Source: Phallusia mammillata
Lineage: Eukaryota
DNA length: 64,000 nt
Direction: 5' to 3'
NCBI GenBank assembly: GCA_965637545.1
Contig: OZ281495.1
Location: 32,674,001 to 32,738,000 of the forward strand
Each line of letters begins with the position of its first letter. The first letter of the stretch is position 1. Below, piece by piece: positions 6-63,536 of the stretch. Both the position numbers and the translations under genes were made by a program. The notes beneath the pieces were generated by a model. The model made no database searches and was not told the origin of the DNA. It saw only the letters and a list, made by a program, of their open reading frames with translations.

Positions 6-3000
6 CATCGTTTATGAAGATGATGAGATTGTTCAACGAAGTGTCAGCACAGCAACAAGACATGGATAGCAGGTGCGGCGATTTGTTTATGGTTTTGTTG
101 ATGTGTAAATTTGTAAAAAAGGTGCTTTGTTAGAATTGGAAAAGGACATTTTCTTATAATACTACCACACAATTGTCCATTCTGAAAGAAATTTATTGCC
201 ATTTTACTACATAGCATGTGTGTGGTCCTTTTTCTATGTTTCCAAAATTAACTTTTTTTCTTGCAAAAACACATTACAACAACAATTCCGAGCATTATAA
301 CTTGCATAAAAACAAACAATTCTTGCATAGATGTTCTTAGCAAAACTGACCCAAAGTAAACTTTTCATCAAAATCATCTTTAGATTCTCTGTAATGCAAC
401 GAACTGTTGACTTACTGGAGAAATACGACATGAAACTTCCCAATGAAACGCAGGAAATGTTTAAATCTGCTCCGGACAGATGGAACCATCTCAAAACCAA
501 AGTATCGCTTGCGAAGCAGAGGCTTGGGCCTAGAATACAGGCGAGTTATGGAATTAAACTAGTGAAGTTGTTTGGTAGAAATAACTTGGATTTGTATGAA
601 TCAATCATATTATAGATTATTCTGCAATTGTTTTGTTGCAGAAGTGTGTTGATTCGTTATATAAAAAATTAAGTCCACACATTTTTTAGTTCGTTGGTTG
701 TTCTGGATCAAAAAATGAATGTTGAATTGTAGAATATATAAAAAGAAAATACTGCATTGTACGATGCAAGCAGTTGTCTGAGCATGGTGTGTCACATGAC
801 AACAATGTAAAACAAACAATAGAAAGAGAGACAAAAAATGAACTAGAATGTGCGATCTTTTTGCCGGCAACGCCATTTAAGTTGTGCACTCCTTTGCTGA
901 ACTAATTTTTGTCTTTGACGTCAATGTCATTTCGATGCTTTTTCACCAACAGGAAGAATCAGACCGGATCACACGTGACCTGTTACGCTTCAGTGAGCGC
1001 GTGGAAGCTCTTGCATCTGAATTGCGCTCATCCGAAGTTTTCTCGCGGGAATGTCCCATCCACGACGCCAACGACATGATTGACGGATTTTTCCGCCGCT
1101 TGAAGGCGCTACAGGCCGAAGCACAAGACCTTATCGAGTTACAGGTAGGTCACATAAAGATGACTTGTTGAAATGCTTATTGTTATGAGCGTGGGTTGTT
1201 ACATATCGTTGTAAGTATGCTGGGAAATTGCCCTTGCTCTCCCTGTTTATTTCATTTTTTAAGACGGTAAAAAAGTCAGAATATGTAAGTGCTTGAACGC
1301 TAAGAAACTATATAGTTAAGTGGGCTGACCTTTAGTCTTACTTGCCGCTGTTTATTAGGTGCTATATTCTGTTCTGGTCCCAATGACCGTTTTTGGTGTG
1401 TTTGCGTAATGATAAAAAACAGCTTGGTCACGTGATTGGGATCTGACGTAACGTATGTATCGATGATGCACACAACTACACAGTTTACCGACTGGTACAT
1501 TTACAGGAACTTCTGGAGAACGCGGTTGTAAATTTCTCGGTCCTCCCCCAATATCAGCGCGACCTCCGCAACTTGAAGTTGGTGTGGGAGCATGTCCGGA
1601 TGCTGGAGGAGGAGCAGAGGGAGTGGAAGAGGAAGCACTGGCAGAAGATCGACACAAAACATCTGCATCAGAATATCCACAAGCAGAAAGATCTGATCCA
1701 GTCGCTACCACCAGAGGTCAGTAGGGTGCTGTGGTGCTAAATGTGTTAGACCAGTGATTCTTAACCGATAGGAAATTTCCTAGTAGTTGGAAAGTATGTA
1801 ATATGAAAGTATGTACAGGCAGAGGCAAAAAATGTTACATAAAGTTTTGCTTTAAATGTTACATCGAATTTATCGAAGGCCATAAATCTGATTGTTTAGT
1901 CACAAAGATAAGTGTTTTCAATTAAAGATCATTATATTGGTAATGTTCGGCACAAACTTTTAAAATGACACAGGGAAATTCAAACTTGAAATTGGCTTTG
2001 GCGGGAAAATACACCGAAAAGGTTAAGAACCACTGTGTTAGACAGAGAAACATTTCACACATCAATATCACAGAACTTTCTGTGTTTGTAACTTACCTTG
2101 CTGCGTTTTGTAGTAGTTGACATGTAATTGACTCGTACAGACGACAGAGTGGGATGTGCATGTTGGAATGATCGCATCAATCGTTGTGATCGAGCAGTGC
2201 TTGCCACTTGTAGAAGATTTGAACCATCCGGCGATGAGAACGAGACATTGGAAACAACTTGTCAGAATTACAGGTAAAAAATGTTTCTCAAAGCATAGCA
2301 AGTATTTTCGCAACAACGAATCATGTTTATTCTGTCGCTTCATCAAAAACTACTTCCATACATAAGGCATAAAAAGTGAAGCTCAAATACTATAGTAATT
2401 TTCTTCACAAATAAATAGGCAGTTTTATCGTATAACAACCAGTGTTTTTCAGGTGGTTTGCTTCAAACTGACACAGACAGCTTGAGGAAAATGATTCTCG
2501 GCGATTTGCTTGAGTTGGGATTACAGAAACATGCCGATGAAGTGAAGGCGATTGTACAGAGGGCTGTCAAAGGTTGGTTGGCAAACATTCTTATTTGTAA
2601 CTTTCGTGCAAGATTAAGTTACAAATCTGGGCTGTCGGTTGTGCAATTTGATTGTAACCAGATAGCAAATCGTATTTTATGACTTTATTAATCAAATTTA
2701 TAGAGCTCTCCTGGCAAGTGTAGTTTCATTCCGACGTTTCGACGTCCTTTACAGGTCGTCTTTATCAGGGTAAATTACAGTGAATGTGCGCGCGATAACG
2801 AATGATTGCGCCTCTAATCTTTGAGCAGGTGCCTGTAGCACGCTGAAAGCATCACGTCTGTTTTGATGTTCATTGTGTTGCCCCGTTGGTGGATATTCCA
2901 TGACTCAAGAAATTGTTTTTATCTGTAGTCAGGCTCTCATTAATTTTGCACATTGAAGAGGGTTACAGTTTCTGAATAAATAGCCATAAAAACATGAAAC

Positions 3001-6000
3001 ATACACAAAATTATTTATAAGGTCCCTTTGCCCTTCTTGGATGTAGACTGGTAAAGTAAATCAAAATGCTCAAAAATCGAAAACAACTAAGTCAACTCAA
3101 AGAAACGAAGTTACCAGAGAGCAAAAGTTACAGACTTTACTTAGAAGATTCCATGGTTAATTTTGCGTTTTCCTTGCAGACCTGACGATCGAGAGTTCAC
3201 TGAAGACTTGCGAGGAAGTTTGGTTGAGCAAAATATTCGAACTCCGCTCTCACACAAGAAGTCAGACTAAAAACATCGGACCGGATCTTGAAGGAAGTGA
3301 CGCAACCGGAAGTGAGATGATGCCGCATGCGATGTTGCAAACACACGAGGGAAGCAAGTATGTGACGTGGAAACACATATTGAACTTTAAAAGATGTAAA
3401 CTTAAAAAAATCAAAAAACAAATCTGCCAGAGAACTTGTTTGTCTGAGATTTATCCTTTCCGTTTTTCCTACTGTAGCCAAACAAATTTTACTAGTTAGA
3501 TTTACCCTGAAATTTTACTAGTTAGATTTATGTCTCCGGTTAAACATCTCTCTGCATGGAAACTTTTTTAGCAAACGTTTTAAACATTTCAATTGTTATA
3601 TCCAGTGTTTTTTTAAAGTGTTTTGGGGGACCGAAACGGTCCCCCAAATTTCTCCAGCGGTTTCCCAAAATTTGCCAGTAGCCTAATAAATAATTCGTTT
3701 AAGCAAATATGGCTATTTTTTGGTATTTAAATGAAACACTTGCGGTCTCTTAAAACTACTTAGCGGTCACCCAAACCAAACCTTAAAAAAAACCTGGTCA
3801 TATCATCGTAATGAGTCAGAAAAATATAAAACGGTGGTTAAGTGTAAAAAGAAAAACAAAAAACAAAGTAAACGGATGTGACGTAAATACTTTCGTTTCC
3901 GACTCAGAACTGGAGGAACTCGAACTAAGAGCATGAAGAGCGGACCTCACAGTAGATCATCCGATAAAACAGGAGCAGGATCGGTGTCTAGAGGCAGAGG
4001 AGGAGGCAGAACATCCGTCCTCTCGCTCCCCATCAGTCTCCTCAACCTGGTCGACGATCCCAGTCCGATTTGTCTCCTCAAAGATGTCGAAAAAATATTC
4101 TCCGATCTCGAGCACCACCAGGTGGACAAAATGATTTTGGTTTTGAAATCATGTGATGACGTTATGATGACGTCATCTAGTTGGGACGTCACTGTCTCTT
4201 AAATCCAAGTTTTAACAATTTTTCAAAAAAATTTACATTTTAAAACAAATTGCATAAATTTTGCATTAACTAATCCTGATTTTTGCGATGTCGTATTTGT
4301 TTTTTAATATCTGATGTTAACTTGGGGATTGTGACGTCACAGATGGAACTGACGCGAATGCAGAGCAACAGCGCGATTGGTTCGTTCCTTGACGAAGTTA
4401 CGAAGTGGCAGAAACGTTTGCATCTGATAGAAGCAGTGCTGGAGGCTTGGGTGAATGTGCAGAGCAAATGGGTTCAACTTGATGAAATATATTCAGGTTT
4501 GGTTCAAGGCAAAGTTACCGTAGAGATCCACAAAATCCATTGTCGTAATTTGTCGTCGCATAAGTCATTCCCCACGTCGTAACAAATGAGGCAGAGCTTT
4601 TTTGGTAGATAATAACTCATGCAGTTAGAACGTGGATAAATAATACGCTTTAAAAATAGAGGTTATTAAAATTGCTTATGATAGAAAGTTGTTTAGTTTC
4701 TTTCAACAGTCAATTGTAGAAATGAATATAAAACACTATTTTGGAACCTTTAGGGCTTCTGCAGAGCTCAAAAGTTCGTGTAGGGCTTATAGAAACTCTT
4801 ACTATCATACCAGACACTGTTGCACGAACTCCCTGTATATGTATTCTTGTATTACACCGTTTCAACCTATGAACAGGTGCAGATGTTCGCACAGCATTAG
4901 CACACGAGGCCAACATGTTCGCTGTGATCAGCAAAGACTTCAGGCTGCTGATGCGAGCCACAGAAAAGAACACAAACGTGCTTCAGGGATGCTCCAGGAA
5001 AGGTTGGTAACCGTTGCTACGTGCCACGTTGCCTTGACAACCGTTACGCATCATCGCGCAGGTCTCCTCCCGATGCTCGAGAAAATGGACTTCAAGATGG
5101 AACAGTGTCGTCACGCGTTGCTAGGCAACCTGGAGCGTCGACGTCAGCGCTTCCCACGCTTTTACTTCCTGTCGCCGGAAGATGTGATGAACATCGTGTG
5201 TTACGGATACGACCTGAACGCGGTCAACAAGTGGGTTGCATGGATAAGTTGATTTAAGTTTAACTGATAGCCTCGCTGCACAAATGTTGCGTTTGACTTG
5301 AAGTGAGATTACTAAAACTTGCAAAACAATTACCTTATTTAAGCCAGTGGTTCCCAACCGTAGCGGAATTTTAAAACTTGGATGGAGGAATTTACTTTAA
5401 TTTCTACATGTGGTTTGTAAATAGACACTTAAGCTCTGGAAATATAACCTGTGAAGTTAATAAAAGACTTGCTTTTAAATGATCTTTGTATGGTTTAGCA
5501 TCTACTATGTAGTATATTGGCGAGGAATGAAAATGTTTTGAATTGTTAAGTGAGGAATTCGTCGAAAAGTTTGGGAACCACTGATTTAAACGATTATATA
5601 ATTTGCTAAGTGGTAACCGTTTCTAAAAATTTGCTTTTTTTGCTATTTCTGATTTTGAGTTTTATTATGTTCTCATACGTACAGTTTTGTGAAGTAGACC
5701 GTTGTTTAAGTGTTTGTTAACTTTTAGTAAGAATCAATAGCAGCACATCTTATTAACTTTGTTTCATTTTCAGATATTTGTGCAAAGTTCTGCCGCATCT
5801 CGGTCGACTCGTCTTTACTGAGCAGCCCCTAGTAGTGAATAAACCTTCCCCGGGTCGTGCCTCCGCTGGTGGGCGCAAGAGGTACAAGGTCACCGGTGTG
5901 TCGAGCACGGCAGGAGAGGTCATGACCTTTCACCGACCCTTGATATACGAAGGACCGATGTCGCTATGGTTACCACAACTTCTTATGGCCATCCAAGCTA

Positions 6001-30000: not shown

Positions 30001-33000
30001 TCCCGTTTTTCCTTCATCTCTTCGACACATCGGTTGGCGACGATTTTGAGGACGACGAAGCTGAGGGGAGTTCATTCGTGCTGAAGGACATCGAGATCAT
30101 ACACGGTAGTGACGTAGGTGATGACGTACAGCTCGGAGATGCGGAGGAGAGCAAGAGGAGGAGAGAGGCTCTTGCGAGGAGGAAAGCGAGTTTGAGGTTG
30201 GGGAGCGCTTCACACAAACTCAAGAAGGGAAGAAGAGGTTCGTGGATTGAAGTTGTTTTCTTTTTACTGCCTAAATTTGCTTTTGCTATGAGTGCAATAC
30301 AATACATAGAATCTCCGAGATCGTTGCTTGGTGGATGAAGACTATATGCAACCTTATTCTATTTGAATAAGATAATGATGATGCTGTAAGCGGTTCGATC
30401 ATTTGTGCTTGTGATGTAATACTTGTACATCAAACTTAAATATAGTATCACCAAGAACCTTTAAAACAGGAGTGGGCAACCTGCGGCCCGCGGGCCGCAT
30501 GCGGCCCTTTATTAAAGGTTGTGCGGCCCGCAGAGACGCTTGGATTTCAAAAGTAATGGCAAACGAGTCCAATTATTACATATTTTTGAGCTGATTAATG
30601 CGCCTGGTGCTAGTTTTCTGCGATCTGGCAAAATGTGGATAGAATCAAATACGAATTATACTTGTAGTTATGCATATTTGGTAAGAAACAAAGCAAAATC
30701 ACTTTTTGTCATGCACATGTGCGGCCCGCGATCCAATTTTGACATTCATAATTGGCCCTACAGTAACAAAGGTTGCCCACCCCTGCTTTAAAAGGATACT
30801 GATGATGCCGTGAACACGAAACATGTATATATTAAAATCTCAAGGACGAATGACTTAATGTTTTTTTCATGAACTTGCTCTGACTGTTAACAAATCGAAA
30901 GTCACGTTTTCCACGCTTTGTGGTAATTTGTGGTTTTCCGCAGTTGCTGCAATTGCTGAAGGAAGCGAAGATGAAAATGAGGAAGAGATTTTTGACACTG
31001 ATTCAAGCGACAAACAGAAGACAAGTGGTAAGCAAATTTCTATCCTTCAATTTAAGTTGCTGACATTGATTTGTTTCGTCAAACTCAAATATTACGTCAC
31101 AATGTTTTAGATTCTGACGAGGCTCACGTCAGTGATGACGACACAGAAAGCAAACCGGGAGAAGGCGGAAGTCACGTCATCGTACCGGAAGTCACGTCAA
31201 TGAGGGGAGAGGACCAGGATTTCGGGGGTTTCCCTAGTGAGAAAGTGAAACAAATTGTGGACGAGCTGACGAAAAGAGTTTTTGCGAACTTATACGGAAG
31301 GTGGGTTGAAATAAGCCGAAGTTTTGTTGCAAATCCGATTTAGTGGCGGTCACGCCTGAAGCAGTGGTCCAATTTGTTACCAAGTTCGTTCTTAATTATT
31401 CGAAAACATAACTCACAGAGAACTCGTGTATAGAGTACATTTTAGTGCAGACCTTCCAATTATCGCTGTTGTCACCAAGTTCTTTCTTAAATGTTTGTTC
31501 AGAAGCGCATTAGACTTTTTCTAGGCTACGCTTCGTAGCGTGGGGATGTTTATAAGACGGGCTGCATTTAGTAAGAACTAAGAAGCATTTTACAGGCCTG
31601 GCATATTTTAATCAGTCTGCAAATGTTAGATTGGTTTTACAGTTCTGTTCATCAGTCAGACATACTTTGTTTATTTCCTTTGAAAACTGAGTAATGATTA
31701 CCTTGTTCTGCTCCTTGTGATTCGATTCTTATTTTTCAAGTGTTCATCCCGAGCATCGAATCCTCATCACAACATTGACGCTCCTCAACATCCAGATGGA
31801 TGCGGCCGAACCTCCTTTCACGGAGGAAGAATCAAATCTTCTCGTTCACGGAAATCCCGGATTAGGAGCGGAGACGAAAGTTTCTTTGTCGGATTTTGGG
31901 AGTGATGGTTCTGCTCCTGAGTGGCTCCCAGCGGATCGATGGGAGGACCTCCTCGCATACTCTGTTCTTCCGGGAGCACTGGAGGGGATTTGTGTCCACG
32001 TGGCTGAGGATGAGGATCACTGGAAGAGCTGGTATGAGCTCCAAAATCCAGAGGTAGGAAAAAGCATTTCAATAATCAAACCTTTAAAACGTTTACAAAA
32101 GATACGTGTAAGAAAATGAAATAAGCAGATCATATTTTGTCTTGCAAGAGATACCATTATCCTGACGAAGGCGTCTTGTATAAGACGTAAAATATTTACA
32201 ATAAAACTGCTGGATAAGCAATATTCGGTTAAGCAGGTCAAATGCTTACACAAGATTTTTGAAGGTTTAAGTTGGCTTTTCTTATTAACGTTGATCAAGG
32301 TCTAATTTTAATCCGACTTTTTTGCTTAACAAGTTGATACATTAGTGTCAAAATTTTCCACCACAGAAAGTGAATCTTCCCTCTCCTCCGGATGAAGTTA
32401 AGGATGACAAACCGGAGCTCACCGACTTCCAACGTCTGCTCCTCATCAAAACTCTTCGTCCCGACCGATTCGAACCCGCTCTGTACTCCTACGTCACCAA
32501 GTACATCGGGGAAACCCCCCTACATGACGTAAGTGCTTCTTTAATGCCAAGGGATGACAACTTTTTAAACGCCGCATGATAAATTACCTAAAGGCGTGCC
32601 AATTTTTGTGTGTGAAATAGCAGTTTATTGTGCCAGCTGATTTAAATGGTAATAAAAAGCAGGCAGAACCGTGCGTTTAGGCTGTTTTTTACGACTAATA
32701 TCAAAATAAACTGAAAACCTGCAGTGTATTAGTTCAAAATCTGTCAAAAATTGTCGTCAATCCAACGTAGACGTGTTAAATTCGATTCATTCCATTCAGA
32801 TTGTTTCCACTTCTTCGCCTCCCGTCGACGCCGAGACGCTCTTCCGTGACGTCACAAACACGTTGGGAATTTTGGTGTTGCTTCCTGACGATGACGAACC
32901 GGAAGTGACGTCACGCGTATCCACGCAACCCGCTGACGCAATCAGACGACTTGCAGAAAAGTGAGTGGAATAATCTTGAAATTGTGGTGTACTAAAATGG

Positions 33001-36000
33001 AATTATAACATTCCGGTGTTTTTTGTGAGGTTGTTGAAACTTGGGTAAAGATTAAAAAAGCTGTTGCTGCCAGGCATAATGTATAACCGAGTATTGATCA
33101 TCCAGAAGTTTTATTGTAAATAATCGACGTCCTATTGAGTTTCGGCGTCCTATTGAGTTTCGGTAAAAACTAAAAACTTCTTCTTCCATGTTGGTTTGAA
33201 CTAATTGTCTGTGAAACGTACCTTGCGTTACAGGATCAGTTGGAAAAACCTTATGTTGTCATGAAGGTTGAAGGTAAAGTTAACCACCTCGCCTGAATCC
33301 TAGGCCAAGTTCGGGATCACCTAATTAATTTCAGTTACACTACATCAATCGTATAAACTTTATGTTGTCATGCAGGTTGAAGGTAACCATGGAAACAGTG
33401 ACGTTGGGTGACGGTTACCAACAAGAAGCGACACGCTGCATCGACAGCGCGTTGAGTCAGGACAGCTGGGCTCTAATACATGGATTGCACCTAGCGCCTG
33501 AGAAGTGAGTAATATCTTTAGCTGGCCCTAAGAAACTTTGTGTATTTTGCGATCTTAAAAACTACAGTGCAGCTGCAGCTCGTTCAGCCATTATCCACCA
33601 TTTGTGCCCGACGCTTTTATGCGCCTCATAACGTCTCAACGTTGCGCAGCTCCTTCCGGCTTGGTGATTGTTTTAGTGCAAAAATGTTTTCTTTCACCAA
33701 GCGAAATAAACTCAACGCTTCGGTTTAGATTTTTTGAAGACCTCCAAATTCAACTGGCGCGAGTCGGAAACGTCAGTCGGAACGAAGGAGATAATGGGAG
33801 TACTGTGACGTCACAAGGAGCGCACTTCCAAGTATGGATGACGTCAAAATCTCACGCTTCGTTGCCCTCGCTACTGACGCAATATCTCTACAAAATGTCG
33901 TGGGACTCTCTGCTGCAGCTAGTGGTCGAGGTTTGTCACGTTATGCCAATATTACGTGTCTTAATTCTTTTTTCCTTTGTTTATCGAGCACTGCACTAGT
34001 CGCATTCTGTGTTATTTACCCTGATGAAGGCGACCTGTATAGGACGTCGAAACGTCGTTATAAAAATACAATTGCTAGAAGAGCTCTATAAACTTGATAT
34101 TATGCCTGGCAGCAATAGTTTATATATTACGTGTGTTAGTTGTGTGGAAACGTTTCTATCTAGGATCCCATACACACATATGTAGTCGCTTGGTAACAAC
34201 TGAACTTCGTCTTTATGCAGGACCGTTCGATTGCTGCCTTATCTGCGTCAACTTGTTCAATCCTCAAATCTTGTCTGATCTCAACATTTTCCCAGGTAGG
34301 ATCGCGTTGATCTCATCAACTGACTTAAGCGAAGTTCCTCATTCTCACTTTATGCTTCACAGATATCCACAGAGGTGATGACGTCATGGTCTGAGGTATC
34401 CGGACCATCAGCGTCGCTGCTTTACGCCGTTCCCATCTGCCACGCCTTCCTATTGGCTCGCCAGTGTTTCGGTTGGCATGGTAACCACGAAAACTATCCG
34501 ATCAAAGAGTCGATTCTTAACCAAGCTCTCCTGTTTGTCATCAAAGGTCGGTTTGCAAGTATATTTGTATTTGTGATGTCACTATAGCGGGTGTTTCGTA
34601 TTTTTCGAATCAGACAAAGGTAGTGTGGCGTCACTGAAACAAATCTACACGGACGTCATCACCACAAACACAGACCAGGTAGGTGACGTAATTATAAATT
34701 AGACGTAATTGTCAAGGATTTCATTGCCGATCTAAAATCTCATGCAGATTTTCATGGAGAGATTGTTTGATGACGTCATAGAGCAGATTGGAACTTCGAA
34801 GAATTCCGTGCAAGTAGATCACGTGACTGTGCCCGTTCCCCCTAGCAACGTGCCAGTCAATGGTCAGTAAATGTTAAGACGAACATAAATTCACAACTGG
34901 GATCAGCCCTAAAGCGTTTAGGCGGGTTCACCACTAAGCCTGTGTAGCTCAGTTGGTAGAGCGCGAGTCCCGGAAAGACTCCGGTCGTGGGTTCGAATCC
35001 CACCACAGGCTAAATTTATCTTGGCTGCGCCTTGCTATGTGGTGGTGAATGCTTGGTGACCGGCTGATTCGGTATAGCGCCTTCAATGGGACGAATTATT
35101 TGATGTGGAGTTTAACAACCAAACATATATGCAGCAGTGCGGAAATGTATTTTTTGTTTTTCCCAGACATCGCATCTTGGCTTCGCGAGAATATTCCAGA
35201 TGCTCTTGACGTCACTTCCTCCCTGTCGCTACCCAAGTGCGCCCTCTCGTGGCGAACGTCGCAGAGGGGAGAGAGAATTCTCACGCAGATGCAAAATCTT
35301 TTCAACGCAGTGCAAGAACCAGGTAAATTGTGAAAATCTGATTTCAATAGAGAATTTTTTCCTGATTATCAACAAACGGATTTAGTTTATGGGGTGTCGT
35401 ATCTACTGCTACTTTCATTCAGGGCTGATCACAGTATGAATGTATGTTCATCTTAGCTGATCAATGGCGATCCCCTACTACGAAGCAGACAGGTGCAGCG
35501 TAAGAGGCAGCCAACGGTACTTGTGATTCAACTTTCGGCGGTTTCTCCACTGAGCCTGTGTAGCTCAGTTGGTAGAGTCCCGGAAAGACTCCTGTCGTGG
35601 GTTCGAATCCCACCACAAGCTAGATTTTTTTATCCTATGCCTTGCCATATGGTGATGCTTGGGGGAACAGGTTTAATTGGCACAACGCCTTCAAATGGGT
35701 CTGTCGTACAAACTGCTACTTCGTTTTGTATCATTTTCTTGTACACTTACGACGTAATTTTGCACCCCCAGGTTACGAGTCGACTCTCCTGTCACCGGGA
35801 AGCACCAGTGACGTAAGCAAGCCGACTTTGACCTTGATCAGGTTGCAGAATGTCCTTGACGCATGCGCAGAGAAACTCCCTCCTCTGCTGGAGCTTGGTG
35901 ATGCGAACCAGGGAAGACTGAAAACTTACGACTTTCCATATCACAGACCATCCGTAATAAGCACTGAAGAGACGGGGATGCCTCATATGCCGGAATCTAT

Positions 36001-39000
36001 TGGGTGAGCTCAAGATAAAAGAGATGTTACTGCCGTGGGTTCGAATCCCACCCCTGACACTTGGTAGTGTTATGATCAATCCAAGTCGCTGTTAAACTAC
36101 ATTCTTTTCTGTAATGCTTCTCAGATGTTGCAAGCGTTTTTGTTTAGTTCAGTAACAGAAGCAAAATACAATACAGGAACAAAAATAAAAATAAACTATC
36201 TTACAGGCCTGTGGTGCTGGAGATTTTCCTCACACCATAGCATAACTCAAACTTTTGTTTTACCAAATTCGCCCTTTTCTTGTATATGGCGATGTCCATT
36301 GAAAATTTTAACATGCAAGTCAATAATCCGCTTTATGTCAGTTTCATTGCCTTACATGTGATCTGACATACTGTATTTCATACTCTATATTTTTCACACA
36401 GTTTCGTGCTCCTGCAAGAGTGCATCTGGTTCAATCGTTGTGTGTGTTTGGCGCGTCAGCAGTTGCACGACATACGTTCACACCTGTTCGTGACTTCCGA
36501 CTACCAACTCGCCCCCGATCTGCGTGAGACCGCTGTCGCCCTTTACCACGAAGAAGTTCCCCTCGCATGGTAAGTCACCTGAACATTTAACACTAGTTGT
36601 ATCCAGTGGTGGGATTCAGCCGGTTCGCACTGGTTCTATAGAACCGTCTCACGAAATTTTATGAGATTAGCGAACCGGTTAGCATTACTGGTTACCACTG
36701 GTATTCATGTGTATGCTTCGTTCAGGCAACATCCCAACGAGATCCCCAACACTCACGTGCTGCTCACGTGGTTGGATTACGTCACAAAGAAGTATATGCA
36801 AATGAGGTCGTGGGTCAAGACCGGGATGGTTCCGGTGGACGGGAAAACCCCTGTGGTGAGTATAAACAGATGTAACAAAAATCCAAATGTTAACAGACTT
36901 GATTATAGGAATGGGTCAAATCGGCAGGCTTTCAGTGTTTAGTCCAGTGGTTCTGAACCTGTGGGTATTTACTCTCTACAAATCTGAAAATTTGACATCT
37001 TTCAGGGACTACTGACTATTTCTTCTGACTAGCACACCCATACATTACGTCGTGATGTGTTGATAAAGTAAAGTAGAATCGTAAGTAACCAGCACAGTTA
37101 AATTATTCAGGGCCCCGTTACATCAATTTGGTTGGGCGGCCTCGTCAACCCTGGAGCCCTGCTCATGGCTTTGTGCACCGAAGCAGTGGCCGCACATGAG
37201 ACTACACATGACCAGGTACCATTCTGACATCACAATAGCATTTGTTACGTCTGAATACGTATTATGTTGAACACAATGTTACAGATCCGCATCAGTTGCA
37301 AGCCCGTACGTCATGATAGTGACATCACAGAACACACGGCGGGAATGTATTTGGAAAATGTTCACACCATGAATTGTGTGTGGGATGAAGAGAGAGGTGC
37401 GTGGATGGGAAGGACTCATGTGTTTGGGTTTCGAAAGGGATTTGGCTCGAGCTTGAGATATAGAATATAAAGATGCTAGGGCCAAAACCCTTTCGGGTAT
37501 ATAGCGGTGACTTTTGGTGACAATATCAAAACATCTGGCAGCTGCCGTGGGTACCATGAATTATAACAGACAAAAAATAGACAAGAACGTTACCTTCTCT
37601 TCTTTTTTTCAACTGTTTTAGAAAAACATAATGCGATAAGGATGATCCCAATAATACACACATGTCCATGGTTATTCGACTCCAGCATCTAGAGCATTTT
37701 GCCTCATCTTTTGTCTTGTCGGAAATCAAGATCAGACCCTTAAACTGCACAATCCCTTTTCAACCGACACACTGAGAGACAGACTTGAAATATTTGGTTG
37801 AACAACTCGAGCAAATTTGCTTTAGGTTGCTTCCAGCGAACGAACCAAGATGAACCCGTGTGCGTTCATCCGTGTCCTCGCATGTACTTTTTTCCCACAA
37901 TGCACTCCGAAGAGGAGGAGGAGCAGGAGAAAACGAGCGATGACGTAGTGGAATACCCGGTCTACGTGAACATGGTGGGTGTCAAAATTTCTGAATCTGT
38001 TGTTCATTTCGATTTCTTTCACAACGATAAATCATAGTACGCCAGGCCCATTAAAGGCGTGCGTGTAGCAAATCAGCTGGTCTCCCAAGCATTTCCATAC
38101 AGCAAGGCACAGGCTAGAAAAATGTAGCCTGCGGTGGGATTCGAACCCACGACAGGAGTCTTTCCGGGACTCGCGTGTGCCTAGCTGTATGGAAATGCTT
38201 GGGAGACCAGCTGATTTGGTACACACCTTTAATGGGCCTGGCGTACTATGATTTATCCAAGTATGAATATGTTCATCTTTCACAATGAGTTTAATCTTTT
38301 TAGTCACGTCAGTGCCTTGTGACGTATTTTACCCTCCCATCGAGTGACGTCAGTCGCTACCGACGTCATCCGAAAGAAACAGCGCGAGCGTTCGATTGTG
38401 GATTGATCCTACAGGACGGCCCCGACCTATCACAGCGCGACACGTATAAGTCACGTGCTTACCTGGCGCACAAAAGGCGGGAAGAGTGGTCACGTGTTTC
38501 GCCGGCTGTCAGCGAGTTGATGTCGAGGTCAGGAACCCGGATGTCCTCGGCGAGACACTCGTTATCCGGTGGGTTGGATGATTAATCATGGGTGGAAAGC
38601 AAATTGACGTAGGTTTAAGTGGCACAGTGTGGAAAGCAGACCTAAGCTGGTTCAGACTACGTGTTAAATTTTCGGACAAATTCTGCCCAAAACAGTTTTT
38701 TTCAAAGCTTTGGCGAAGTTGGAGCCAAAATGCTCAGTAGCGCTATTGGATCTAAAATCACAAGAATTCTTCGTAAAACAGAATAGTGTTTCACTGCTAT
38801 TGCACCGTAAGGCAACAAACAGCGACACTGGTAAAGAACTAACTCAGTTTTTCAACAAAATAAGTAACATAAAGTTTAAACTACTTCATTTATTTTTCAG
38901 GTCCGCGTATGTCAGTGACATCACTACCTGTGAGCGTCACAACCGCGTTGAAGTCACAGGTAGCTTCGAGCCAACAAGCAGAAGGTCCAGGGATCGAATC

Positions 39001-40053
39001 CCGACCCCAACTCTACCCCGAAGATACATTCGTCGTTTCACAAAAATCACAATCGAGTCTTGCGTCATCACTCAGTGACTTGACACAACACAACGAACGT
39101 GAGACAATTTCTCAATTTGAAAAAATACTTTGGTATTTGCACACTTCGAAAAACATGAGACTGAAAACTGAAGTCGTCCACCGTTTTTTTTGTGTTTAGA
39201 TAAATATATTTCACCTAAGTAATAGGCAATCATGTAACTTATTGAAATAGAACTTCTAAAAAACTTTTGGTATCTTTAAAAATCTATTTTCACTTTAGAT
39301 CAACAAAAATCCCAAACTCGACCACCGTTGGCTAATGGTGACGTCAAACATTTGGTAAGTATGACGTCAGTAGGAAGTATGCATCCAAATTTAATGTGGA
39401 GAAATTTTTAAACAGAAATCTGAAGTTTTATCCGAGGGAGACGAAAGTGCGACACATGGTGGTGATGTTCCCAACCAACAAGATCCACCAACGGGCGATG
39501 AAGAGGTAAAAACAATATTTGGGAACAGAAACATGTATTTAGTGGTGGGTTTCAATTTTTTTTTTTTGTCAGATATTTCTATCACAAAAGTCATATTTTT
39601 CAGCATGTTCTGTTACAAAAAGTCCATTGACAGTAACCAGTAATGCTAACCGGTTCGCTGATCTCATAAAATTTCGTGAGGCAGTTCTATAGAACCGATG
39701 CGAACTGACTGAATCCCACCACTGAAACATGTTTGCTCATCCAGTAAAACCAACCCCTCGACTACTTGGTGGCTAACATTAGGTTTAAACAAAACTAACA
39801 AACCTATTCTGCTCATTGACAGGAAACTCAATCCAACGTTGAACCTGATTCGGGCCGCTCTCAGTCACCAGATGGCGCTCATACTGATCCGTCTCAACAA
39901 GGAAGTAATGATGACACACAGGTACCACTATAGACATCATAAACATAGTTGCAGAGTCAAATAACATAAATGTTTATCTGATAGTTGGAGCGGGAAGGAA
40001 GTTTGTTGCAAACTATCTTGGATGAGGGGCAGACCACAGAAGATGAACCATAA
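6..40053 (+). CDS. Divergent dynein heavy chain-like protein, 5'-partial (N-terminal tail upstream of window), ~82 exons, ~4600 aa in window
   Basis: Phase-compatible exons follow DHC domain order. Linker: MRTRHW (2141-2273), RFPRFYFLS (5062-5230). AAA1: FDYGFEYQG..YVVTP (10082-11391). AAA2: GDAGCGKS (14484-14507), EWKDG, LPNNERL. AAA3: GPLGCGKS (16927-16950), MVDDLN, LWRHE. AAA4 (19254-21621). Stalk/MTBD: ELRSLQKP..W..FLDELMSFD (23553-23741). AAA5: RPPLLLDP. AAA6: FQRLLLIKTLRPDR, WALIHGLHL. C-domain: EVPLAW, WLGGL, EYPVY. Stop TAA at 40051-40053. Orthology unresolved, so no symbol given. Confidence 0.93.
541..952 (+). other. Probable GC-AG intron in the dynein-like gene
   Basis: CAG|GCGAGT donor joins in phase 0 to caacag|GAAGAA (RIQ-EESDR). 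No phase-compatible GT donor was seen before the stop at 613-615. Confidence 0.7.
1752..2035. mobile_element. hAT (Charlie/Buster-type) MITE
   Basis: TIR CAGTGATTCTTAACC / GGTTAAGAACCACTG; perfect 8-bp TSD tgttagac. Confidence 0.9.
2700..2930 (-). mobile_element. Penelope-like retroelement 3' fragment (family C): GIY-YIG C-terminal remnant plus minimal hammerhead
   Basis: Minus-strand translation YR*KQFLESWNIHQRGNTMNIKTDVMLSACYRHLLKD* (stop at 2814-2816), followed by CTGATAA..GACG/CGTC..GAAACGTC (2725-2780). Confidence 0.78.
3603..3796. mobile_element. hAT-type MITE
   Basis: TIR cagtgttttttttaaag / ccttaaaaaaaacctg; TSD gttatatc / gtcatatc. Confidence 0.75.
5345..5583. mobile_element. hAT MITE; second copy at 45667-45908
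   Basis: TIR CAGTGGTTCCCAAC / TTGGGAACCACTG; TSD atttaagc / atttaaac; internal homology to 45667-45908. Confidence 0.88.
6165..6346. mobile_element. hAT MITE, degenerate
   Basis: cagaagttggcaacc / ggttgcccacccctg; TSD cactgaaa / cactaaag. Confidence 0.7.
7748..7950 (+). mobile_element. hAT MITE family A (CAGTGGTGGGATTC) with an internal ~28-bp tandem duplication
   Basis: Homologous to 27907-28078, 29720-29905, 36604-36700, 39540-39724 and 44794-44940. Confidence 0.85.
8466..8751. mobile_element. hAT-type MITE with TAGGGATG termini
   Basis: TAGGGATG / CATCCCTA; perfect TSD attaatag. Confidence 0.85.
9826..10003 (+). mobile_element. Family C Penelope-like fragment with hammerhead (core at 9927-9962)
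   Basis: Reverse-complement match to 20998-21180; G>T at the base of stem II. Confidence 0.78.
13691..13885. mobile_element. hAT-type MITE
   Basis: Perfect 14-bp TIR CAGTGCCGGATTAA; perfect TSD ggcagaat. Confidence 0.92.
15266..15447 (+). mobile_element. tRNA-like-containing repeat, copy A (cloverleaf 15281-15353)
   Basis: A/B-box-like motifs, cloverleaf, T-run and shared tail ending ggcctggcgtactttgatt. Confidence 0.85.
19575..19750. mobile_element. Family D repeat, inverted pair of partial hammerheads
   Basis: Minus-strand 3' half at 19611-19645 and plus-strand degenerate copy at 19691-19743, tails pointing outward. Confidence 0.75.
20560..20960 (+). pseudogene. hAT transposase catalytic-domain fossil
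   Basis: Frameshifted translation RFSLTLDE..RNRLYLNV..RSLGMVRVNG..LVTKHLNDFG..GCVTDGAAVMVKFG..HQQ*FAHALDLAVCDVIYK. This matches the first two catalytic Asp motifs and the decayed CxxH of hAT transposases. Confidence 0.8.
20998..21230 (-). mobile_element. Family C Penelope-like fragment with the best-preserved short-stem-III hammerhead (21013-21075)
   Basis: NIKTDVMLPACYRQLLKD* then ttatttacc-CTGATGA-A-GGCG.CCT-GTAT-AGG.CGTC-GAAACGTC-ggaataa on the minus strand. Confidence 0.8.
24469..25008 (+). mobile_element. hAT (Charlie/SPIN-like) deletion derivative with an N-terminal transposase remnant
   Basis: TIR (c)ggggtggggaacct / aggttccccacccctg; perfect TSD gtttagaa; YRVFQKQWTDF/VELSDKPVCLVCC..KKSNLQR* at ~24767-24881. 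Confidence 0.88.
27370..27551. mobile_element. hAT MITE, degenerate
   Basis: cagaggtcggcaacc / ggttccaaccactg; TSD only partly retained. Confidence 0.6.
27907..28078 (-). mobile_element. hAT MITE family A
   Basis: TSD gatgtatt / gatgtact. Confidence 0.88.
28526..28795 (-). mobile_element. tRNA-like-containing repeat, copy B (cloverleaf 28613-28677, D-arm deletion)
   Basis: Shares leader and tail with copies D and F. Confidence 0.85.
29108..29410. mobile_element. hAT-type MITE; related copy in opposite orientation at 49155-49424
   Basis: cagagttcggagcgggc / gcccgcttacatctctg; perfect TSD cttcaaac. Confidence 0.85.
29720..29905 (+). mobile_element. hAT MITE family A, full length
   Basis: TIRs plus perfect TSD gttgtaat. 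Confidence 0.92.
30467..30785. mobile_element. hAT (Charlie-type) MITE
   Basis: CAGGAGTGGGCAACCT / AGGTTGCCCACCCCTG; GCGGCCCG subterminal repeats; perfect TSD ctttaaaa. Confidence 0.92.
33984..34128 (+). mobile_element. Family C Penelope-like fragment with hammerhead (core at 34021-34056)
   Basis: CTGATGAAGGCGACCTGTATAGGACGTCGAAACGTC plus the family tail (..ttgatattatgcctggcagcaatag). Confidence 0.8.
34895..35095 (+). mobile_element. tRNA-like-containing repeat, copy C (complete 73-nt cloverleaf 34938-35010)
   Basis: GCCTGTG/CACAGGC, GCTC/GAGC, GAGTC/GACTC and GTGGG/CCCAC stems are all perfect; TAGCTCAGTTGG and GGTTCGAATCC boxes. Confidence 0.9.
35418..35712 (+). mobile_element. tRNA-like-containing repeat, copy D (cloverleaf 35554-35620) with ~135-nt leader
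   Basis: Leader matches the reverse complement of 28680-28795 and 48960-49030. Confidence 0.88.
36604..36700 (+). mobile_element. hAT MITE family A, truncated
   Basis: 5' half matches 29720-29815. Confidence 0.85.
38030..38253. mobile_element. tRNA-like-containing repeat, copy E: ~80-bp near-perfect inverted tails around a half cloverleaf (38127-38175, minus)
   Basis: aatcatagtacgccaggcccattaaagg ... cctttaatgggcctggcgtactatgatt. Confidence 0.88.
39540..39724 (-). mobile_element. hAT MITE family A
   Basis: Reverse-complement homology to 29720-29905. Confidence 0.88.
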
Positions 40054-41401
40054 GCCTTTATCCTGTAGGTTGGTCTTTATCTTTTTAACCATATGCTTGC
40101 AATAATTCCAACATTTTACTTTGTTATGTAGGAAACAAGACATTCCATCTGATCTTATGCGACAATTTTGTGGAAAATTTCACTGTGATTTTTTGAAGTG
40201 TTTTAGTTTTATTGCATCCATCAAAATGGCACACTTTTTATTCCAAAATATTTTACCTGACTCTGTGCAAAACTGACAACAACAAAAAGTTTTTTACACT
40301 ATTGTCCACAACTACTGTGATGCATGTTCAGTAGTGCTCATTTTTAATTAAATTGTGTTACTTTACCTTGTTAGTGAACAGTTTACCTTATTGGTGCTCT
40401 GTATAATTTACCTGCTTTATATAAGTTTTTAACTCTACTGTGAAATTACAAACAATTGTACCTACCACCATTACTTTGCATTTTCTCATTATCTTCAACA
40501 TTCCAGCGTGGTTTGTTTCATGGTGTTCCTTTGATCTCTGCTTTAGATCTGTTTCAAAAAATTGTATGAATGATTTTGGGGTTGTGGAAATAAATAATTG
40601 TGTGAGGATTGTTTTGTCTATTCCATCAGTTTAAAGAAGTTTGATTTCAAGTATTATTGTCTTGAAATCAAGACTTGCAACAATGAATTCAAATTAATGT
40701 GAAGACCGGAACAGAATGCTTTTGCCAAAGCAGTCCAATGCACATTTCATATCTCAATACAAATGATTCTGGTTATTAGAAACTCTAAATTGCTTGTCTT
40801 ATTTACTTTTTATTAACCTGGATATTTTCTAAACAAATAATACCTACATTTTGGATTCATTATGCATAAACATGGAATTTTCTGGAAAAACTTTTGTAAT
40901 GCACTTGAAAATACATTGCTTACTTATACTCAACCTTGTCATTACAAACAAAAGACCAGAACTGTGAAGTGACAAAAACGTAGTACCTGATTTTCCATTG
41001 CATTGGTTTTTCGTTTCTAAATTTTGGATCCAAATAAAATCCAGAATCCAGATATATGCAAAATTCAATTGCATATTTAATCCCAAGACCTAAAAAACTG
41101 ATTTGCCTTCTATGGTTGAGTTGAGTAAATATATCTTCAAACTCCTCTGAGCAGTATGGCCCTGAAAACTAAGCGTTAATTGAGCTTTTTGTTAAAATTT
41201 AGAATTACTACTTCACAGAAACACAAAAGTTTAAAATTTGACCGGCGGGTCGCAGTACAATATGCCAATGTCAAATATCCTATGCGGCAGGGTTCGTGAT
41301 AAGTCATGCGTAACGCGCCGCGGTGTTTGTTGATACTTTCCAGTGTGCAAAACTTTGTATTAAACGGAATATTTTAGTTTTCAACAATTTTCACTGAAAA
41401 T

Positions 41402-43399: not shown

Positions 43400-43650
43400 T
43401 TGCTTGCCTAACATTTCTGTCTGCCTCATAATAGAGGGTCAAATGAATTTGTTTGTTTTTTTCATTGTGCACTTTTTCATTTATTAAACATTGCCACAGA
43501 AAGATCCCCGTTTTCAATTTTGTATTACTGATCAGGTTTTTAACAGAATGGTGAAATGCTTTCATTCCAAATGTTCGAACAGCATTTTGAGGCTAACATG
43601 TAAAAATTTATACTGCAGGCTTTTAGATCCATTTTTCAGTAAGACTAGAC

Positions 43651-44037
43651 CAGGGGTGGGGAACCTGCGGCCTTCGATGTCAGAATACAATTTTGGATGT
43701 TGAACACTGCCAAGAGACCAAGGTTCTACAATCTTACTTGTGTTGCGAAAAAACAATTGTTTGCGCATAATCGAATGTCTTAAACTCGTCTGTGATGTCG
43801 CAAGCTGCTCTTAGATTGATATTGATAAACAAGCGAGTTTCTACGTTAATAAAATCGTGAATGTTGTAGTGAGGGTGGAAATGTAGTGACGAATTTTATT
43901 TAGCTTGGATCAACCATTCTGTATGTCAAAAAGTTTGAATGCCACTGTCCTTTGCCTGAGAAATAGTCTGTGCGGCCTGAACGAGTGTCAATAAACCGTT
44001 TGGCGGCCTTCACAAACAAAAAGGTTCCCCACCCCTG
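43651..44037. mobile_element. hAT (Charlie-type) MITE just downstream of the GTF2H3 stop
   Basis: Perfect TIR CAGGGGTGGGGAACCT; perfect TSD gactagac. Confidence 0.93.

Positions 44038-45578: not shown

Positions 45579-63536
<17,958 letters not shown>

What the first reader, a model, noticed from the sequence alone, without database searches (positions are those of the whole stretch)
916..39370. Strong excess of TGACGTCA (CRE palindrome) in and next to dynein coding exons
I counted 30 perfect TGACGTCA sites in the dynein gene by eye (e.g. 916, 4332, 9128, 11873, 16401, 16425, 16506, 26008, 26164, 28318, 32847, 32906, 33806, 34379, 39339, 39362). 21 lie in ~13.8 kb of coding exon, where about 0.2 are expected at 50% GC. 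8 of the 9 intronic sites lie within ~60 nt of a splice junction. Only 2 were seen in 41.4-64 kb (GTF2H3 and CIC). The motif is read in different frames (DV, MTS, VTS), so it is unlikely to be protein-driven. Inference: an exon-associated DNA-level code, such as bZIP binding, protection from gene-body methylation or nucleosome marking, superimposed on the coding sequence.
Basis: partly seen in the sequence, partly recalled or inferred. Interest (0 to 1): 0.7.

Follow-up and report, generated by a model that had tools for sequence, protein, structure and literature searches.

The report
Exon-linked excess of TGACGTCA palindrome
The exact 8-letter palindrome TGACGTCA (the classic CRE binding site) occurs about 40 times more often than expected in and right next to the exons of a CpG-rich dynein gene. 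It is written over codon choice and even amino acids, also in related species, and I found no description of this for an animal genome.

Summary
TGACGTCA occurs 32 times in the window against about 1 expected, and 30 of these lie in the dynein gene.

With an exon model backed by RNA contigs and cross-species matches:
- 21 sites lie in exons (49x) and 7 in intron flanks of 60 nt or less (58x).
- Only 1 lies in 17 kb of intron interior, and 2 in the 24 kb CpG-depleted neighbourhood.
- Shuffling synonymous codons gives 1.0 sites (maximum 4) against 21 observed.
- The peak is very sharp: perfect sites 40x, one-mismatch 2.8x, two-mismatch 1.1x.
- Half-sites are symmetric between strands, which points to recognition of double-stranded DNA.
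- The peptides MTS, VTS and DVT are 5-7x over-represented.

Orthologous loci from at least three related species also carry the excess (about 7-21x) and it is again exon-linked. Most sites are lineage-specific and arose through several substitutions, for example MLS to MTS.

Best reading: these are recognition sites of a methylation-sensitive CREB/ATF-type bZIP dimer. A directional pressure, either selection or binding-dependent drive, keeps writing them into exon-proximal DNA of germline-unmethylated genes. The binding factor and the function were not tested.

Other first-reader notes of this scan report the same excess on other DNA of this genome. The closest analogue is cyanobacterial HIP1. 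I found no paper describing this in an animal.

The parts
953..40053 (+). Divergent axonemal-type dynein heavy chain gene. 79 modelled exons, 13,503 nt of CDS in the window; the gene probably continues upstream of the window. It forms the CpG-undepleted domain that carries 30 of the 32 sites.
   Evidence: PDB matches to dynein heavy chains. Orthologous ORFs carry Pfam AAA_6, AAA_7, Dynein_AAA_lid and AAA_8. Exon model. 13-kb spliced RNA contigs. CpG o/e is 0.99 in exons and 0.84 in introns.
40054..64000 (.). Neighbouring CpG-depleted region (CpG o/e 0.64; GTF2H3/Tfb4 from about 41.8 kb on the + strand) with only 2 sites.
916..923 (.). TGACGTCA, 29 nt upstream of the first modelled acceptor (953).
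4168..4175 (.). TGACGTCA, intronic, 46 nt after the donor. The near-sites TGACGTTA and GGACGTCA lie 11 and 16 nt away.
4332..4339 (.). TGACGTCA, in the same intron as 4168, 3 nt before the acceptor.
9128..9135 (.). TGACGTCA, intronic, 8 nt before the acceptor.
11446..11453 (.). TGACGTCA, intronic (71-nt intron), 9 nt before the acceptor.
11873..11880 (.). TGACGTCA, exonic, read as V-T-S. Relatives have S-T-S or S-S-S.
16401..16570 (.). Dense cluster at the 5' end of the 816-nt AAA3 exon. Perfect sites at 16401, 16425 and 16506, plus TTACGTCA at 16522 and several half-sites. The same stretch is a cluster in relatives.
   Evidence: Site 16506 is shared with L002. Position 16556 is a perfect site in L001 and L002 but reads TGACGTGT here.
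18510..18517 (.). TGACGTCA, exonic, ATG-ACG-TCA (MTS). All three relatives have ATG-CTN-TCN (MLS).
19103..19110 (.). TGACGTCA, exonic (S-D-V-T), in a variable segment.
21469..21476 (.). TGACGTCA, exonic (G-D-V-T). Shared with L001; L002 has CGACGTCA.
24640..24647 (.). TGACGTCA, the only deep-intron site (188 nt from the donor, 685 nt from the acceptor).
26008..26037 (.). Pair of sites 22 nt apart that straddles the 5' splice site of a 64-nt intron: 26008 is exonic (L-D-V-N) and 26030 is intronic.
   Evidence: (26008 conserved in L004).
26164..26171 (.). TGACGTCA, exonic, ATG-ACG-TCA (MTS). The relative has ATG-GCG-AGC (MAS).
26304..26311 (.). TGACGTCA in the middle of a 116-nt intron.
26467..26474 (.). 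TGACGTCA, exonic (H-D-V-S).
28318..28347 (.). Pair of exonic sites 22 nt apart (M-T-S and P-D-V-I).
32847..32854 (.). TGACGTCA, exonic, CGT-GAC-GTC-ACA. The relative has AAG-GAT-GTC-TCG.
32906..32913 (.). TGACGTCA, exonic (V-T-S).
33806..33846 (.). Two exonic sites 33 nt apart (V-T-S and M-T-S) in an RNA-supported exon.
34379..34386 (.). TGACGTCA, exonic (M-T-S), 16 nt after an RNA-supported acceptor.
34771..34778 (.). TGACGTCA, exonic (D-D-V-I), 23 nt after an RNA-supported acceptor.
35207..35214 (.). TGACGTCA, exonic (L-D-V-T), 40 nt after an RNA-supported acceptor.
38345..38352 (.). TGACGTCA, exonic (S-D-V-S), flanked by the near-sites TCACGTCA (38304) and CGACGTCA (38361).
39339..39369 (.). 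Pair of sites 23 nt apart that straddles a 5' splice site: 39339 is exonic and 39362 is intronic at +7.
41443..41450 (.). TGACGTCA between the dynein stop codon and the first recognisable GTF2H3 (Tfb4) ORF. This is a promoter-like position.
47254..47261 (.). TGACGTCA inside a + strand ORF (47174-47497) with no Pfam match.

Best explanation
TGACGTCA here is a double-stranded-DNA word read by a dimeric, sequence-exact, CpG-methylation-sensitive factor. The most likely reader is a CREB/ATF-class bZIP, whose canonical site this is. In this animal lineage a directional pressure keeps creating and keeping perfect sites in exons and their immediate flanks, in genes whose CpGs are not depleted (that is, genes unmethylated in the germline). 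It acts through ordinary substitutions at synonymous positions and at weakly constrained amino-acid positions. The result is a homotypic array of about 1.5 sites per kb of exon.

Shown here: the excess itself, its sharpness, its strand symmetry, its position relative to exons, its confinement to the CpG-rich gene, its imprint on codons and peptides, and its independent build-up in related species.

Inferred: Also inferred: that occupancy is the selected property, for example keeping exon-proximal DNA of these genes unmethylated or chromatin-marked where gene-body methylation is absent.
For: - Exact 8-mer at 40x, one-mismatch variants at 2.8x, two-mismatch at 1.1x. This is the specificity profile of a high-affinity dimer site, not of composition.
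- The only extension is R at -1 and Y at +1. The best-tolerated variant is TTACGTCA/TGACGTAA at 9x. From my own knowledge, this variant is a known functional CRE, as in the PEPCK promoter.
- Half-sites and variants are equally frequent on both strands of a transcribed gene: 44/38, 9/9 and 10/8 for half-sites, 23 against 23 for variants.
- Synonymous shuffles give 1.0 against 21 observed. Of motif-compatible peptides, 13 of 19 xDVx and 5 of 5 MTS are actually spelled as the motif. MTS, VTS and DVT are 5-7x over-represented.
- The gene with the sites has CpG o/e 0.93 and the neighbours without them 0.64. CpG methylation of this very sequence abolishes factor binding (Iguchi-Ariga and Schaffner 1989; I saw only the citation, in the reference list shown).
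- Relatives carry 5, 5 and 4 sites per 20-41 kb against about 0.3-0.6 expected. Nine of 14 lie in aligned exons, P=0.004.
- Gains are lineage-specific and need 2-4 substitutions: MLS to MTS at 18510, AGC-GAT-GTG to AGT-GAC-GTC in L002, MAS to MTS at 26164.
- Sites cluster, with 4 pairs 22-24 nt apart, P=0.004.
Against: - No binding, accessibility or methylation data were available, so the factor and the function are inferred.
- Ordinary CREs are promoter-proximal and tolerate mismatches. Nothing known about CREB/ATF explains a preference for exons.
- Selection for binding would more cheaply place sites in introns. Yet intron interiors are nearly empty (1 site in 17 kb), so an exon-specific role has to be assumed, or else the sequence-age explanation.
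- Individual sites are not significantly more conserved than other exonic 8-mers (3 of 29 against 4.6%, P=0.15).
- Sites avoid conserved protein segments. This fits a weak pressure that could equally be non-adaptive.
Confidence: 0.45

Rival explanations
1. Non-adaptive molecular drive. A sequence-specific DNA-binding or repair activity biases gene conversion or mismatch correction toward the perfect palindrome. One route is very-short-patch-type repair. Another is that bound sites suppress local meiotic breaks, so motif-bearing alleles are over-transmitted. Sites then pile up wherever the DNA is unmethylated and old enough, whatever their use to the organism.
For: - Sites turn over fast and are gained independently in each lineage.
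- They override amino acids, including L to T in an otherwise conserved RNLMLSLGPG segment.
- They concentrate in weakly constrained segments.
- Intensity differs several-fold between related species.
- Intron interiors and transposon ORFs, which are probably young, lack the motif.
- Precedents from my own knowledge: Vsr/Dcm and CCWGG in E. coli; uptake sequences in Haemophilus and Neisseria.
Against: - No such activity is known in animals.
- Drive should also fill old unconstrained intron sequence, but the non-repeat part of intron interiors is still nearly empty.
- Xu et al. (PMC5861425) rejected biased repair for HIP1, the closest analogue, on the basis of site conservation. That test is inconclusive here.
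Confidence: 0.27
2. RNA-level signal. UGACGUCA in the pre-mRNA acts as a splicing or exon-definition element, or the self-complementary copies pair with each other to shape the transcript. This would explain why sites sit in exons and within about 60 nt of splice junctions.
For: - Enrichment is equal in exons and in intron flanks of 60 nt or less, but absent from intron interiors.
- Two pairs straddle a 5' splice site, and one intron has a site near each end.
- Pairs fold into 8-10 bp hairpins of -9 to -16 kcal/mol.
- The gene is transcribed and spliced.
Against: - Half-sites and one-mismatch variants are strand-symmetric on the sense strand.
- Variants that would keep G-U pairing are no commoner than their complements (5 against 8).
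- An exact 8-nt palindrome is atypical for RNA-binding proteins.
- One site lies in a promoter-like, intergenic position (41443).
- An RNA signal does not explain the near absence from the adjacent CpG-poor genes unless mutation outweighs selection there.
- The hairpins follow by construction from two copies of a palindrome.
Confidence: 0.1
3. Ordinary gene-specific regulation. The sites are cAMP- or stress-responsive enhancers of this dynein gene only.
For: The sequence is the canonical CRE. Sites form homotypic clusters such as 16401-16570, and that cluster is also present in relatives.
Against: Thirty sites spread over 40 kb is far beyond any described enhancer array. Other first-reader notes report the same excess in NLR and SOCS exons and in other stretches of this genome (not checked by me).
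Confidence: 0.05
4. By-product of composition, codon usage, protein sequence or a dispersed repeat.
For: Exons are GC- and CpG-rich, and D, V, T and S are common residues.
Against: - Dinucleotide shuffles give 0.97, synonymous-codon shuffles 1.0 and codon-order shuffles 0.27.
- First-order Markov expectation is 0.43 in exons.
- Flanks of the sites share no sequence.
- Only 0.9% of exon bases have a second copy in the window.
- The sites are present in independent RNA contigs.
Confidence: 0.02

Closest known systems
Canonical cAMP response element (CRE) bound by CREB/ATF-family bZIP dimers
   Same: Identical 8-bp palindrome. Purine/pyrimidine flank preference. The half-site variant TTACGTCA is tolerated. 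The central CpG is one whose methylation blocks binding. Sites are found in unmethylated DNA.
   Different: CREs are few, promoter-proximal and often imperfect. Here perfect sites occur at about 1.5 per kb inside coding exons and splice-site flanks along a 40-kb gene body, and they shape the protein sequence.
HIP1 (GCGATCGC), the highly iterated palindrome of cyanobacteria (PMC5861425, PMC4390886)
   Same: An exact 8-bp palindrome with a central CG-containing core. It is over-represented 15-300 fold, lies inside ORFs in several frames, is linked to DNA methylation, and its function is still debated.
   Different: HIP1 is bacterial and spread over the whole chromosome. Its sites are conserved between genomes and it has cognate methyltransferases. 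Here the host is an animal, the word is confined to exon-proximal DNA of CpG-rich genes, and site turnover is high (3 of 29 conserved, not significant).
Duons: exonic transcription-factor sites that bias codon choice (Stergachis et al. 2013; my own knowledge)
   Same: A DNA-binding code laid over the genetic code, with effects on synonymous and amino-acid choice.
   Different: Duon effects are weak, spread over many motifs and disputed. Here a single word shows roughly 50-fold enrichment and a visible peptide imprint.
DNA uptake sequences (USS/DUS) and Vsr/Dcm-driven CCWGG excess in bacteria (my own knowledge)
   Same: Short exact words accumulate genome-wide, including in ORFs with a peptide imprint, through a transmission or repair bias rather than a function at each site.
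   Different: Those mechanisms (natural transformation, very-short-patch repair) are not known in animals. No strand or orientation feature is seen here.
PATC (periodic An/Tn clusters) in C. elegans germline genes (my own knowledge)
   Same: A gene-body DNA-level code tied to the chromatin state of a class of genes.
   Different: PATCs are intronic, AT-rich and 10-bp periodic. They are not a protein-site-like exact palindrome in exons.

Membership tests
CRE / CREB-ATF bZIP binding site | Sequence TGACGTCA (palindromic full CRE) | tested here: met
   32 exact matches. The variant profile favours TTACGTCA and R/Y flanks.
CRE / CREB-ATF bZIP binding site | Bound by a CREB/ATF-family dimer in vitro or in vivo | not testable with these tools
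   No binding or footprint data. The species' bZIP genes are not in the window.
CRE / CREB-ATF bZIP binding site | Promoter-proximal position conferring signal-dependent transcription | tested here: not met
   30 of 32 sites lie inside a gene body, 21 of them in exons. Only 41443 is in a promoter-like position.
Highly iterated palindrome (HIP-like) | Exact palindromic octamer over-represented at least 15-fold against composition-aware expectation | tested here: met
   40x in the gene, 49x in exons, 58x in intron flanks. No other 8-bp palindrome comes close.
Highly iterated palindrome (HIP-like) | Genome-wide and shared by related genomes | tested here: inconclusive
   Relatives show 7-21x in the orthologous gene. 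For this genome there are only unchecked first-reader notes from other windows.
Highly iterated palindrome (HIP-like) | Individual sites conserved beyond background | tested here: inconclusive
   3 of 29 site-relative comparisons are conserved, against 4.6% for other exonic 8-mers, P=0.15.
Highly iterated palindrome (HIP-like) | Cognate sequence-specific DNA methyltransferase | not testable with these tools
   No genome-wide gene set or methylome was available.
Duon (exonic TF site shaping codons) | Codon and amino-acid choice biased toward the motif | tested here: met
   Synonymous shuffle gives 1.0 against 21. 13 of 19 xDVx and 5 of 5 MTS peptides are spelled as the motif. MTS occurs 5 times against 0.7 expected.
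Duon (exonic TF site shaping codons) | TF footprint in exons | not testable with these tools
   No DNase or ATAC data.
Exonic/intronic splicing enhancer (RNA motif) | Sense-strand specificity | tested here: not met
   TGACG against CGTCA outside full sites: 44/38 in exons, 9/9 in flanks, 10/8 in interiors. One-mismatch variants 23 against 23.
Exonic/intronic splicing enhancer (RNA motif) | Concentration near splice junctions | tested here: inconclusive
   7 of 8 intronic sites lie within 60 nt (P=0.003). Inside exons the mean relative position is about 0.39, not significantly off-centre.
Dispersed repeat / mobile element remnant | Shared flanking sequence or multiple copies | tested here: not met
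   Flanks are unrelated. Only 0.9% of exon bases are repeated in the window. Sites are in frame in conserved exons.

The most novel reading that the evidence does not exclude
An animal counterpart of a highly iterated palindrome. This would be a clade-wide DNA code in which perfect CRE palindromes, read by a methylation-sensitive bZIP, mark the exons of genes that lack gene-body methylation. The code would be strong enough to override codon choice and weakly constrained amino acids. It would form a second, sequence-encoded system of exon or gene-body marking alongside DNA methylation.
Probability: 0.3. Interest if true: 0.9.

Novelty: new variant of a known kind. Interest (0 to 1): 0.75.

Why it matters
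If it holds genome-wide, this is a clean natural case of a non-coding DNA word competing with the genetic code in an animal. A single exact transcription-factor palindrome is enriched about 50-fold in exons, measurably changes protein sequences, and is tied to the unmethylated class of genes.

It would make several open questions directly testable:
- Whether exonic transcription-factor sites (duons) really shape protein evolution.
- What distinguishes unmethylated from methylated gene bodies in invertebrates.
- Whether motif-specific drive, as known from bacterial uptake sequences and HIP1, exists in animals.

It also matters in practice. Such a pressure can mimic positive selection in dN/dS scans, and it biases codon-usage and motif-discovery analyses in this clade.

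Tried and rejected
- Composition, codon usage or protein sequence as the cause. Rejected by dinucleotide, synonymous-codon and codon-order shuffles and by Markov expectations.
- Repeat, transposon footprint or introner origin. Rejected because flanks are unrelated, sites are in frame in exons whose boundaries match those of relatives, and a direct-repeat target-site-plus-footprint structure cannot produce this palindrome.
- Simple survival of CpGs in a favoured context. Rejected because the excess lies far above zero-order expectation and sites arise through several non-CpG substitutions. The deaminated forms TGATGTCA/TGACATCA are not piled up in the CpG-poor neighbours (3 against 1.4 expected).
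- A longer hidden motif. None found beyond R/Y at positions -1 and +1.
- A general tendency toward palindromes. Only TGACGTCA is strongly enriched; TCACGTGA reaches 8x on 6 copies.
- RNA hairpins from paired sites. They fold, but only by construction, so this discriminates nothing.
- A 5' bias of sites inside exons. Not significant.
- Site conservation test in the manner of the HIP1 study. Inconclusive at about 64% nucleotide identity.
- Literature. Seven full-text searches aimed at this question found no description of an exonic TGACGTCA excess in an animal. An eighth search retrieved the HIP1 papers.
- Organism identity. It is coded in the run table and I did not pursue it.
- Limits of the tools. 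Read laying allowed one call, so only 33.7-39.6 kb has RNA-supported exons and no polymorphism data could be collected. Exons 0-12 (953-8878) rest on the ab initio model alone.
Full report
**1. Observation**

TGACGTCA occurs 32 times in the 64-kb window. Thirty copies lie between 916 and 39369, and the other two are at 41443 and 47254. One hundred dinucleotide-preserving shuffles give a mean of 0.97 and never more than 4. It is the most over-represented 8-mer in the window (38x zero-order). It is also the only strongly over-represented 8-bp palindrome.

**2. What the region is**

The + strand from 953 to 40053 encodes a divergent axonemal-type dynein heavy chain.
- Translated exons match dynein chains in the PDB.
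- Orthologous ORFs in other assemblies carry Pfam AAA_6, AAA_7, Dynein_AAA_lid and AAA_8.
- RNA contigs of about 13 kb from four runs of the same coded organism are spliced at GT..AG introns across 33.7-39.6 kb. The 14 exons they define are in frame.

I built a dynamic-programming exon model and tuned it on those 14 exons, recovering 14 of 14 with no false exon. It gives 79 exons and 13,503 nt of CDS. Most of exons 13-66 have tblastn matches in related species, many covering the exon end to end. Exons 0-12 rest on the model alone. The gene probably continues upstream of the window. GTF2H3 (Tfb4) follows on the + strand from about 41.8 kb.

**3. Where the sites are**

| Class | Size | Observed | Expected (first-order Markov) | Ratio |
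|---|---|---|---|---|
| Exons | 13.5 kb | 21 | 0.43 | 49x |
| Intron flanks, 60 nt or less | 8.6 kb | 7 | 0.12 | 58x |
| Intron interiors | 17 kb | 1 | 0.18 | n.s. |
| Downstream region 40-64 kb | 24 kb | 2 | 0.27 | 7x |

- Site 916 lies 29 nt upstream of the first modelled exon and is not in the table.
- Seven of the 8 sites in modelled introns lie within 60 nt of a junction, where 34% of intron bases lie (P=0.003).
- Half-site density (TGACG or CGTCA) falls from 9.0 per kb in exons to 3.7 in flanks and 1.1 in interiors. Flanks and interiors have the same GC content and CpG o/e.
- Sites cluster. Four pairs are 22-24 nt apart (P=0.004 by simulation) and near-sites gather around perfect ones. 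Two of the pairs straddle a 5' splice site.

**4. Not a by-product of coding**

- Only the two frames without a TGA stop are used: 8 sites as M/V-T-S and 13 as D-V.
- Shuffling synonymous codons with the protein kept gives 1.01 sites (maximum 4 in 2000). Shuffling codon order gives 0.27. The observed count is 21.
- Among peptides that could be spelled as the motif, 5 of 5 MTS, 3 of 9 VTS and 13 of 19 xDVx are spelled that way.
- The protein itself is skewed: MTS 5 against 0.7 expected, VTS 9 against 1.8, DVT 7 against 1.2.

**5. Recognition properties**

- The peak is very sharp: 0 mismatches 30 against 0.8 (40x), 1 mismatch 46 against 16.7 (2.8x), 2 mismatches 180 against 165 (1.1x).
- The best single variant is TTACGTCA/TGACGTAA, 13 copies (9x).
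- The motif does not extend beyond 8 bp, apart from a purine at -1 and a pyrimidine at +1.
- On the sense strand of this transcribed gene, half-sites outside full sites are symmetric: TGACG/CGTCA is 44/38 in exons, 9/9 in flanks and 10/8 in interiors.
- One-mismatch variants split 23 against 23 between the two halves.
- Variants that would preserve G-U pairing in RNA are not favoured (5 against 8).

Together these point to a symmetric reader of double-stranded DNA, not a single-stranded RNA motif.

**6. Link with CpG depletion**

- The dynein gene has CpG o/e of 0.99 in exons and 0.84 in introns. The 2-kb windows range from 0.75 to 1.13.
- From 40 kb onward CpG o/e drops to 0.64, with windows mostly between 0.45 and 0.75.
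- In invertebrates such a contrast conventionally separates germline-unmethylated from gene-body-methylated genes. This is established knowledge, not measured here.
- The motif is therefore a feature of the putatively unmethylated gene.
- The deaminated forms are not piled up next door (3 against 1.4 expected). The neighbours did not simply lose an equal load of sites.

**7. Related species**

The 271-aa AAA3 exon finds orthologues at 51-73% identity. Their contigs come from three ENA metagenome-type assemblies and one JGI sample.
- TGACGTCA counts are 5 (L001), 5 (L002), 1+3 (L003 and L004, the same contig) and 1 (L005, 3.3 kb). Expectations are 0.32, 0.24, 0.27+0.33 and 0.04.
- Nine of the 14 sites in L001-L004 lie inside aligned exons, which make up 27% or less of the loci (P=0.004). 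Three more lie within about 70 nt of an exon.
- Transposon ORFs inside those introns (6.8 kb) have none.

The sites are mostly not orthologous. Of 29 site-by-relative comparisons, 3 are perfectly conserved: 16506 with L002, 21469 with L001 and 26008 with L004. The background for other exonic 8-mers is 4.6% (P=0.15).

Gains need several changes:

| Position | Sequence with the motif | Sequence without it |
|---|---|---|
| 18510 | ATG-ACG-TCA (MTS), window | ATG-CTN-TCN (MLS), all three relatives |
| 26164 | ATG-ACG-TCA, window | ATG-GCG-AGC |
| 32847 | CGT-GAC-GTC-ACA, window | AAG-GAT-GTC-TCG |
| window 20254 | AGT-GAC-GTC-ACA, L002 | AGC-GAT-GTG-ACT in L001 (AAC in L003) |

At window position 20254, L002 alone spells the conserved S-D-V-T as the motif. 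That makes three synonymous differences within 8 nt.

Sites prefer weakly constrained segments. Relatives agree with each other at 47% of motif codons, at 60% in the 10 codons on either side, and at 75% elsewhere.

**8. Interpretation**

A directional pressure for the exact palindrome acts independently in each lineage. It acts on exon-proximal DNA of a CpG-rich gene, and it is strong enough to fix synonymous and mildly deleterious replacements.

The recognition profile is that of a dimeric DNA-binding protein. The sequence, its flanks and its tolerated variant are those of CREB/ATF-type bZIP sites. Binding of factors to this sequence is blocked by CpG methylation (I saw this only as a citation, in the reference list shown).

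- I rank occupancy-dependent selection first (0.45). Candidate functions are maintaining or marking unmethylated exon-proximal chromatin.
- A non-adaptive, binding- or repair-dependent conversion drive comes second (0.27).
- RNA-level roles are third (0.10), because of the strand symmetry.

The exon-proximity pattern is the main argument for an exon-directed role. Its main caveat is sequence age. At least 20% of intron-interior bases are repeats with other copies in this window alone, so interiors may simply be too young to have accumulated sites.

**9. Comparison with known systems**

The word is the canonical CRE. Its placement (gene body and exons), its density (1.5 per kb of exon) and its perfection are not CRE-like.

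The nearest phenomenon is HIP1 of cyanobacteria. HIP1 is an exact 8-bp palindrome, 15-300x over-represented, found inside ORFs, linked to methyltransferases and maintained by selection (PMC5861425, PMC4390886). HIP1 sites are conserved, whereas the sites here turn over.

Other analogues, all from my own knowledge, are duons, bacterial uptake sequences with Vsr-type repair bias, and C. elegans PATCs.

Seven full-text searches aimed at the question found no description of such an excess in an animal.

**10. Earlier notes of this scan**

Six other first-reader notes report the same excess on other DNA of this genome. They cover NLR exons, SOCS exons, a stretch where the excess is 'confined to the CpG-rich domain', and a stretch where it 'imprints the protein sequence'. 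I could not check those windows. The statements about the CpG-rich domain and the protein imprint hold in this window.

**11. Limits**

- No methylation, binding or polymorphism data were available.
- RNA support covers only 33.7-39.6 kb.
- The relatives are distant, at about 64% nucleotide identity in exons.
- The organism names are coded.

Noticed in passing
window 7738-7920, 15257-15447, 27900-28081, 28538-28801, 29704-29905, 33961-34139, 34916-35090, 35439-35709, 36588-36696, 38030-38175, 39533-39725, 44794-44945, 47446-47563, 48790-49028, 56711-56838: A short interspersed repeat of about 110-270 nt has at least 5 further matches within the window, mostly in intron interiors. RNA contig depth over some copies is hundreds to thousands (33897-34093, 34882-35078, 36458-36851, 38034-38230). 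The copy at 34916-35090 contains the tRNA-like cloverleaf that another first-reader note reports at 34938-35020, so this is probably a tRNA-derived SINE.
   Followed up: partly
window 38901-40053: In the ab initio model the dynein ends in a long serine-rich, low-complexity C-terminal extension, and the last four small exons (39299-40053) lack RNA or cross-species confirmation here. The in-window CDS upstream of 33729 (11,033 nt) exceeds the 10,360 nt of the longest RNA contig. Either the contig is incomplete at its 5' end or up to about 700 nt of modelled exon is wrong.
   Followed up: partly
window 40054-64000: Outside the dynein gene the half-site TGACG is three times commoner than its complement CGTCA on the + strand (21 against 7). 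The copies are scattered and are not a repeat. Unexplained; it could be chance.
   Followed up: partly
window 1-40053: The E-box palindrome TCACGTGA (6 copies, 8x) and GTCACGTG (8 copies in the window, 13x) are also over-represented. They reuse the same GTCA/TGAC half-words in everted order.
   Followed up: no
window 16401/16425, 26008/26030, 28318/28340, 39339/39362: All four close pairs of perfect sites are 22-24 nt apart start to start, about two helical turns. Distances of 16, 33 and 52 nt recur among near-sites. The numbers are too few to test periodicity here.
   Followed up: partly
window 36618 joined to 39578 (RNA contigs X7, X8, X10): Contigs join these two places with 18 foreign letters between them and no GT..AG ends. 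This is most likely a repeat-mediated assembly chimera rather than a splice.
   Followed up: no
L004 14249-16053; L001 1-1084; L003 1-2322 and 14007-15574: In relatives the introns of the orthologous dynein gene hold apparently intact hAT-like transposase and reverse-transcriptase ORFs. This makes the gene much longer than in the window's compact genome.
   Followed up: no
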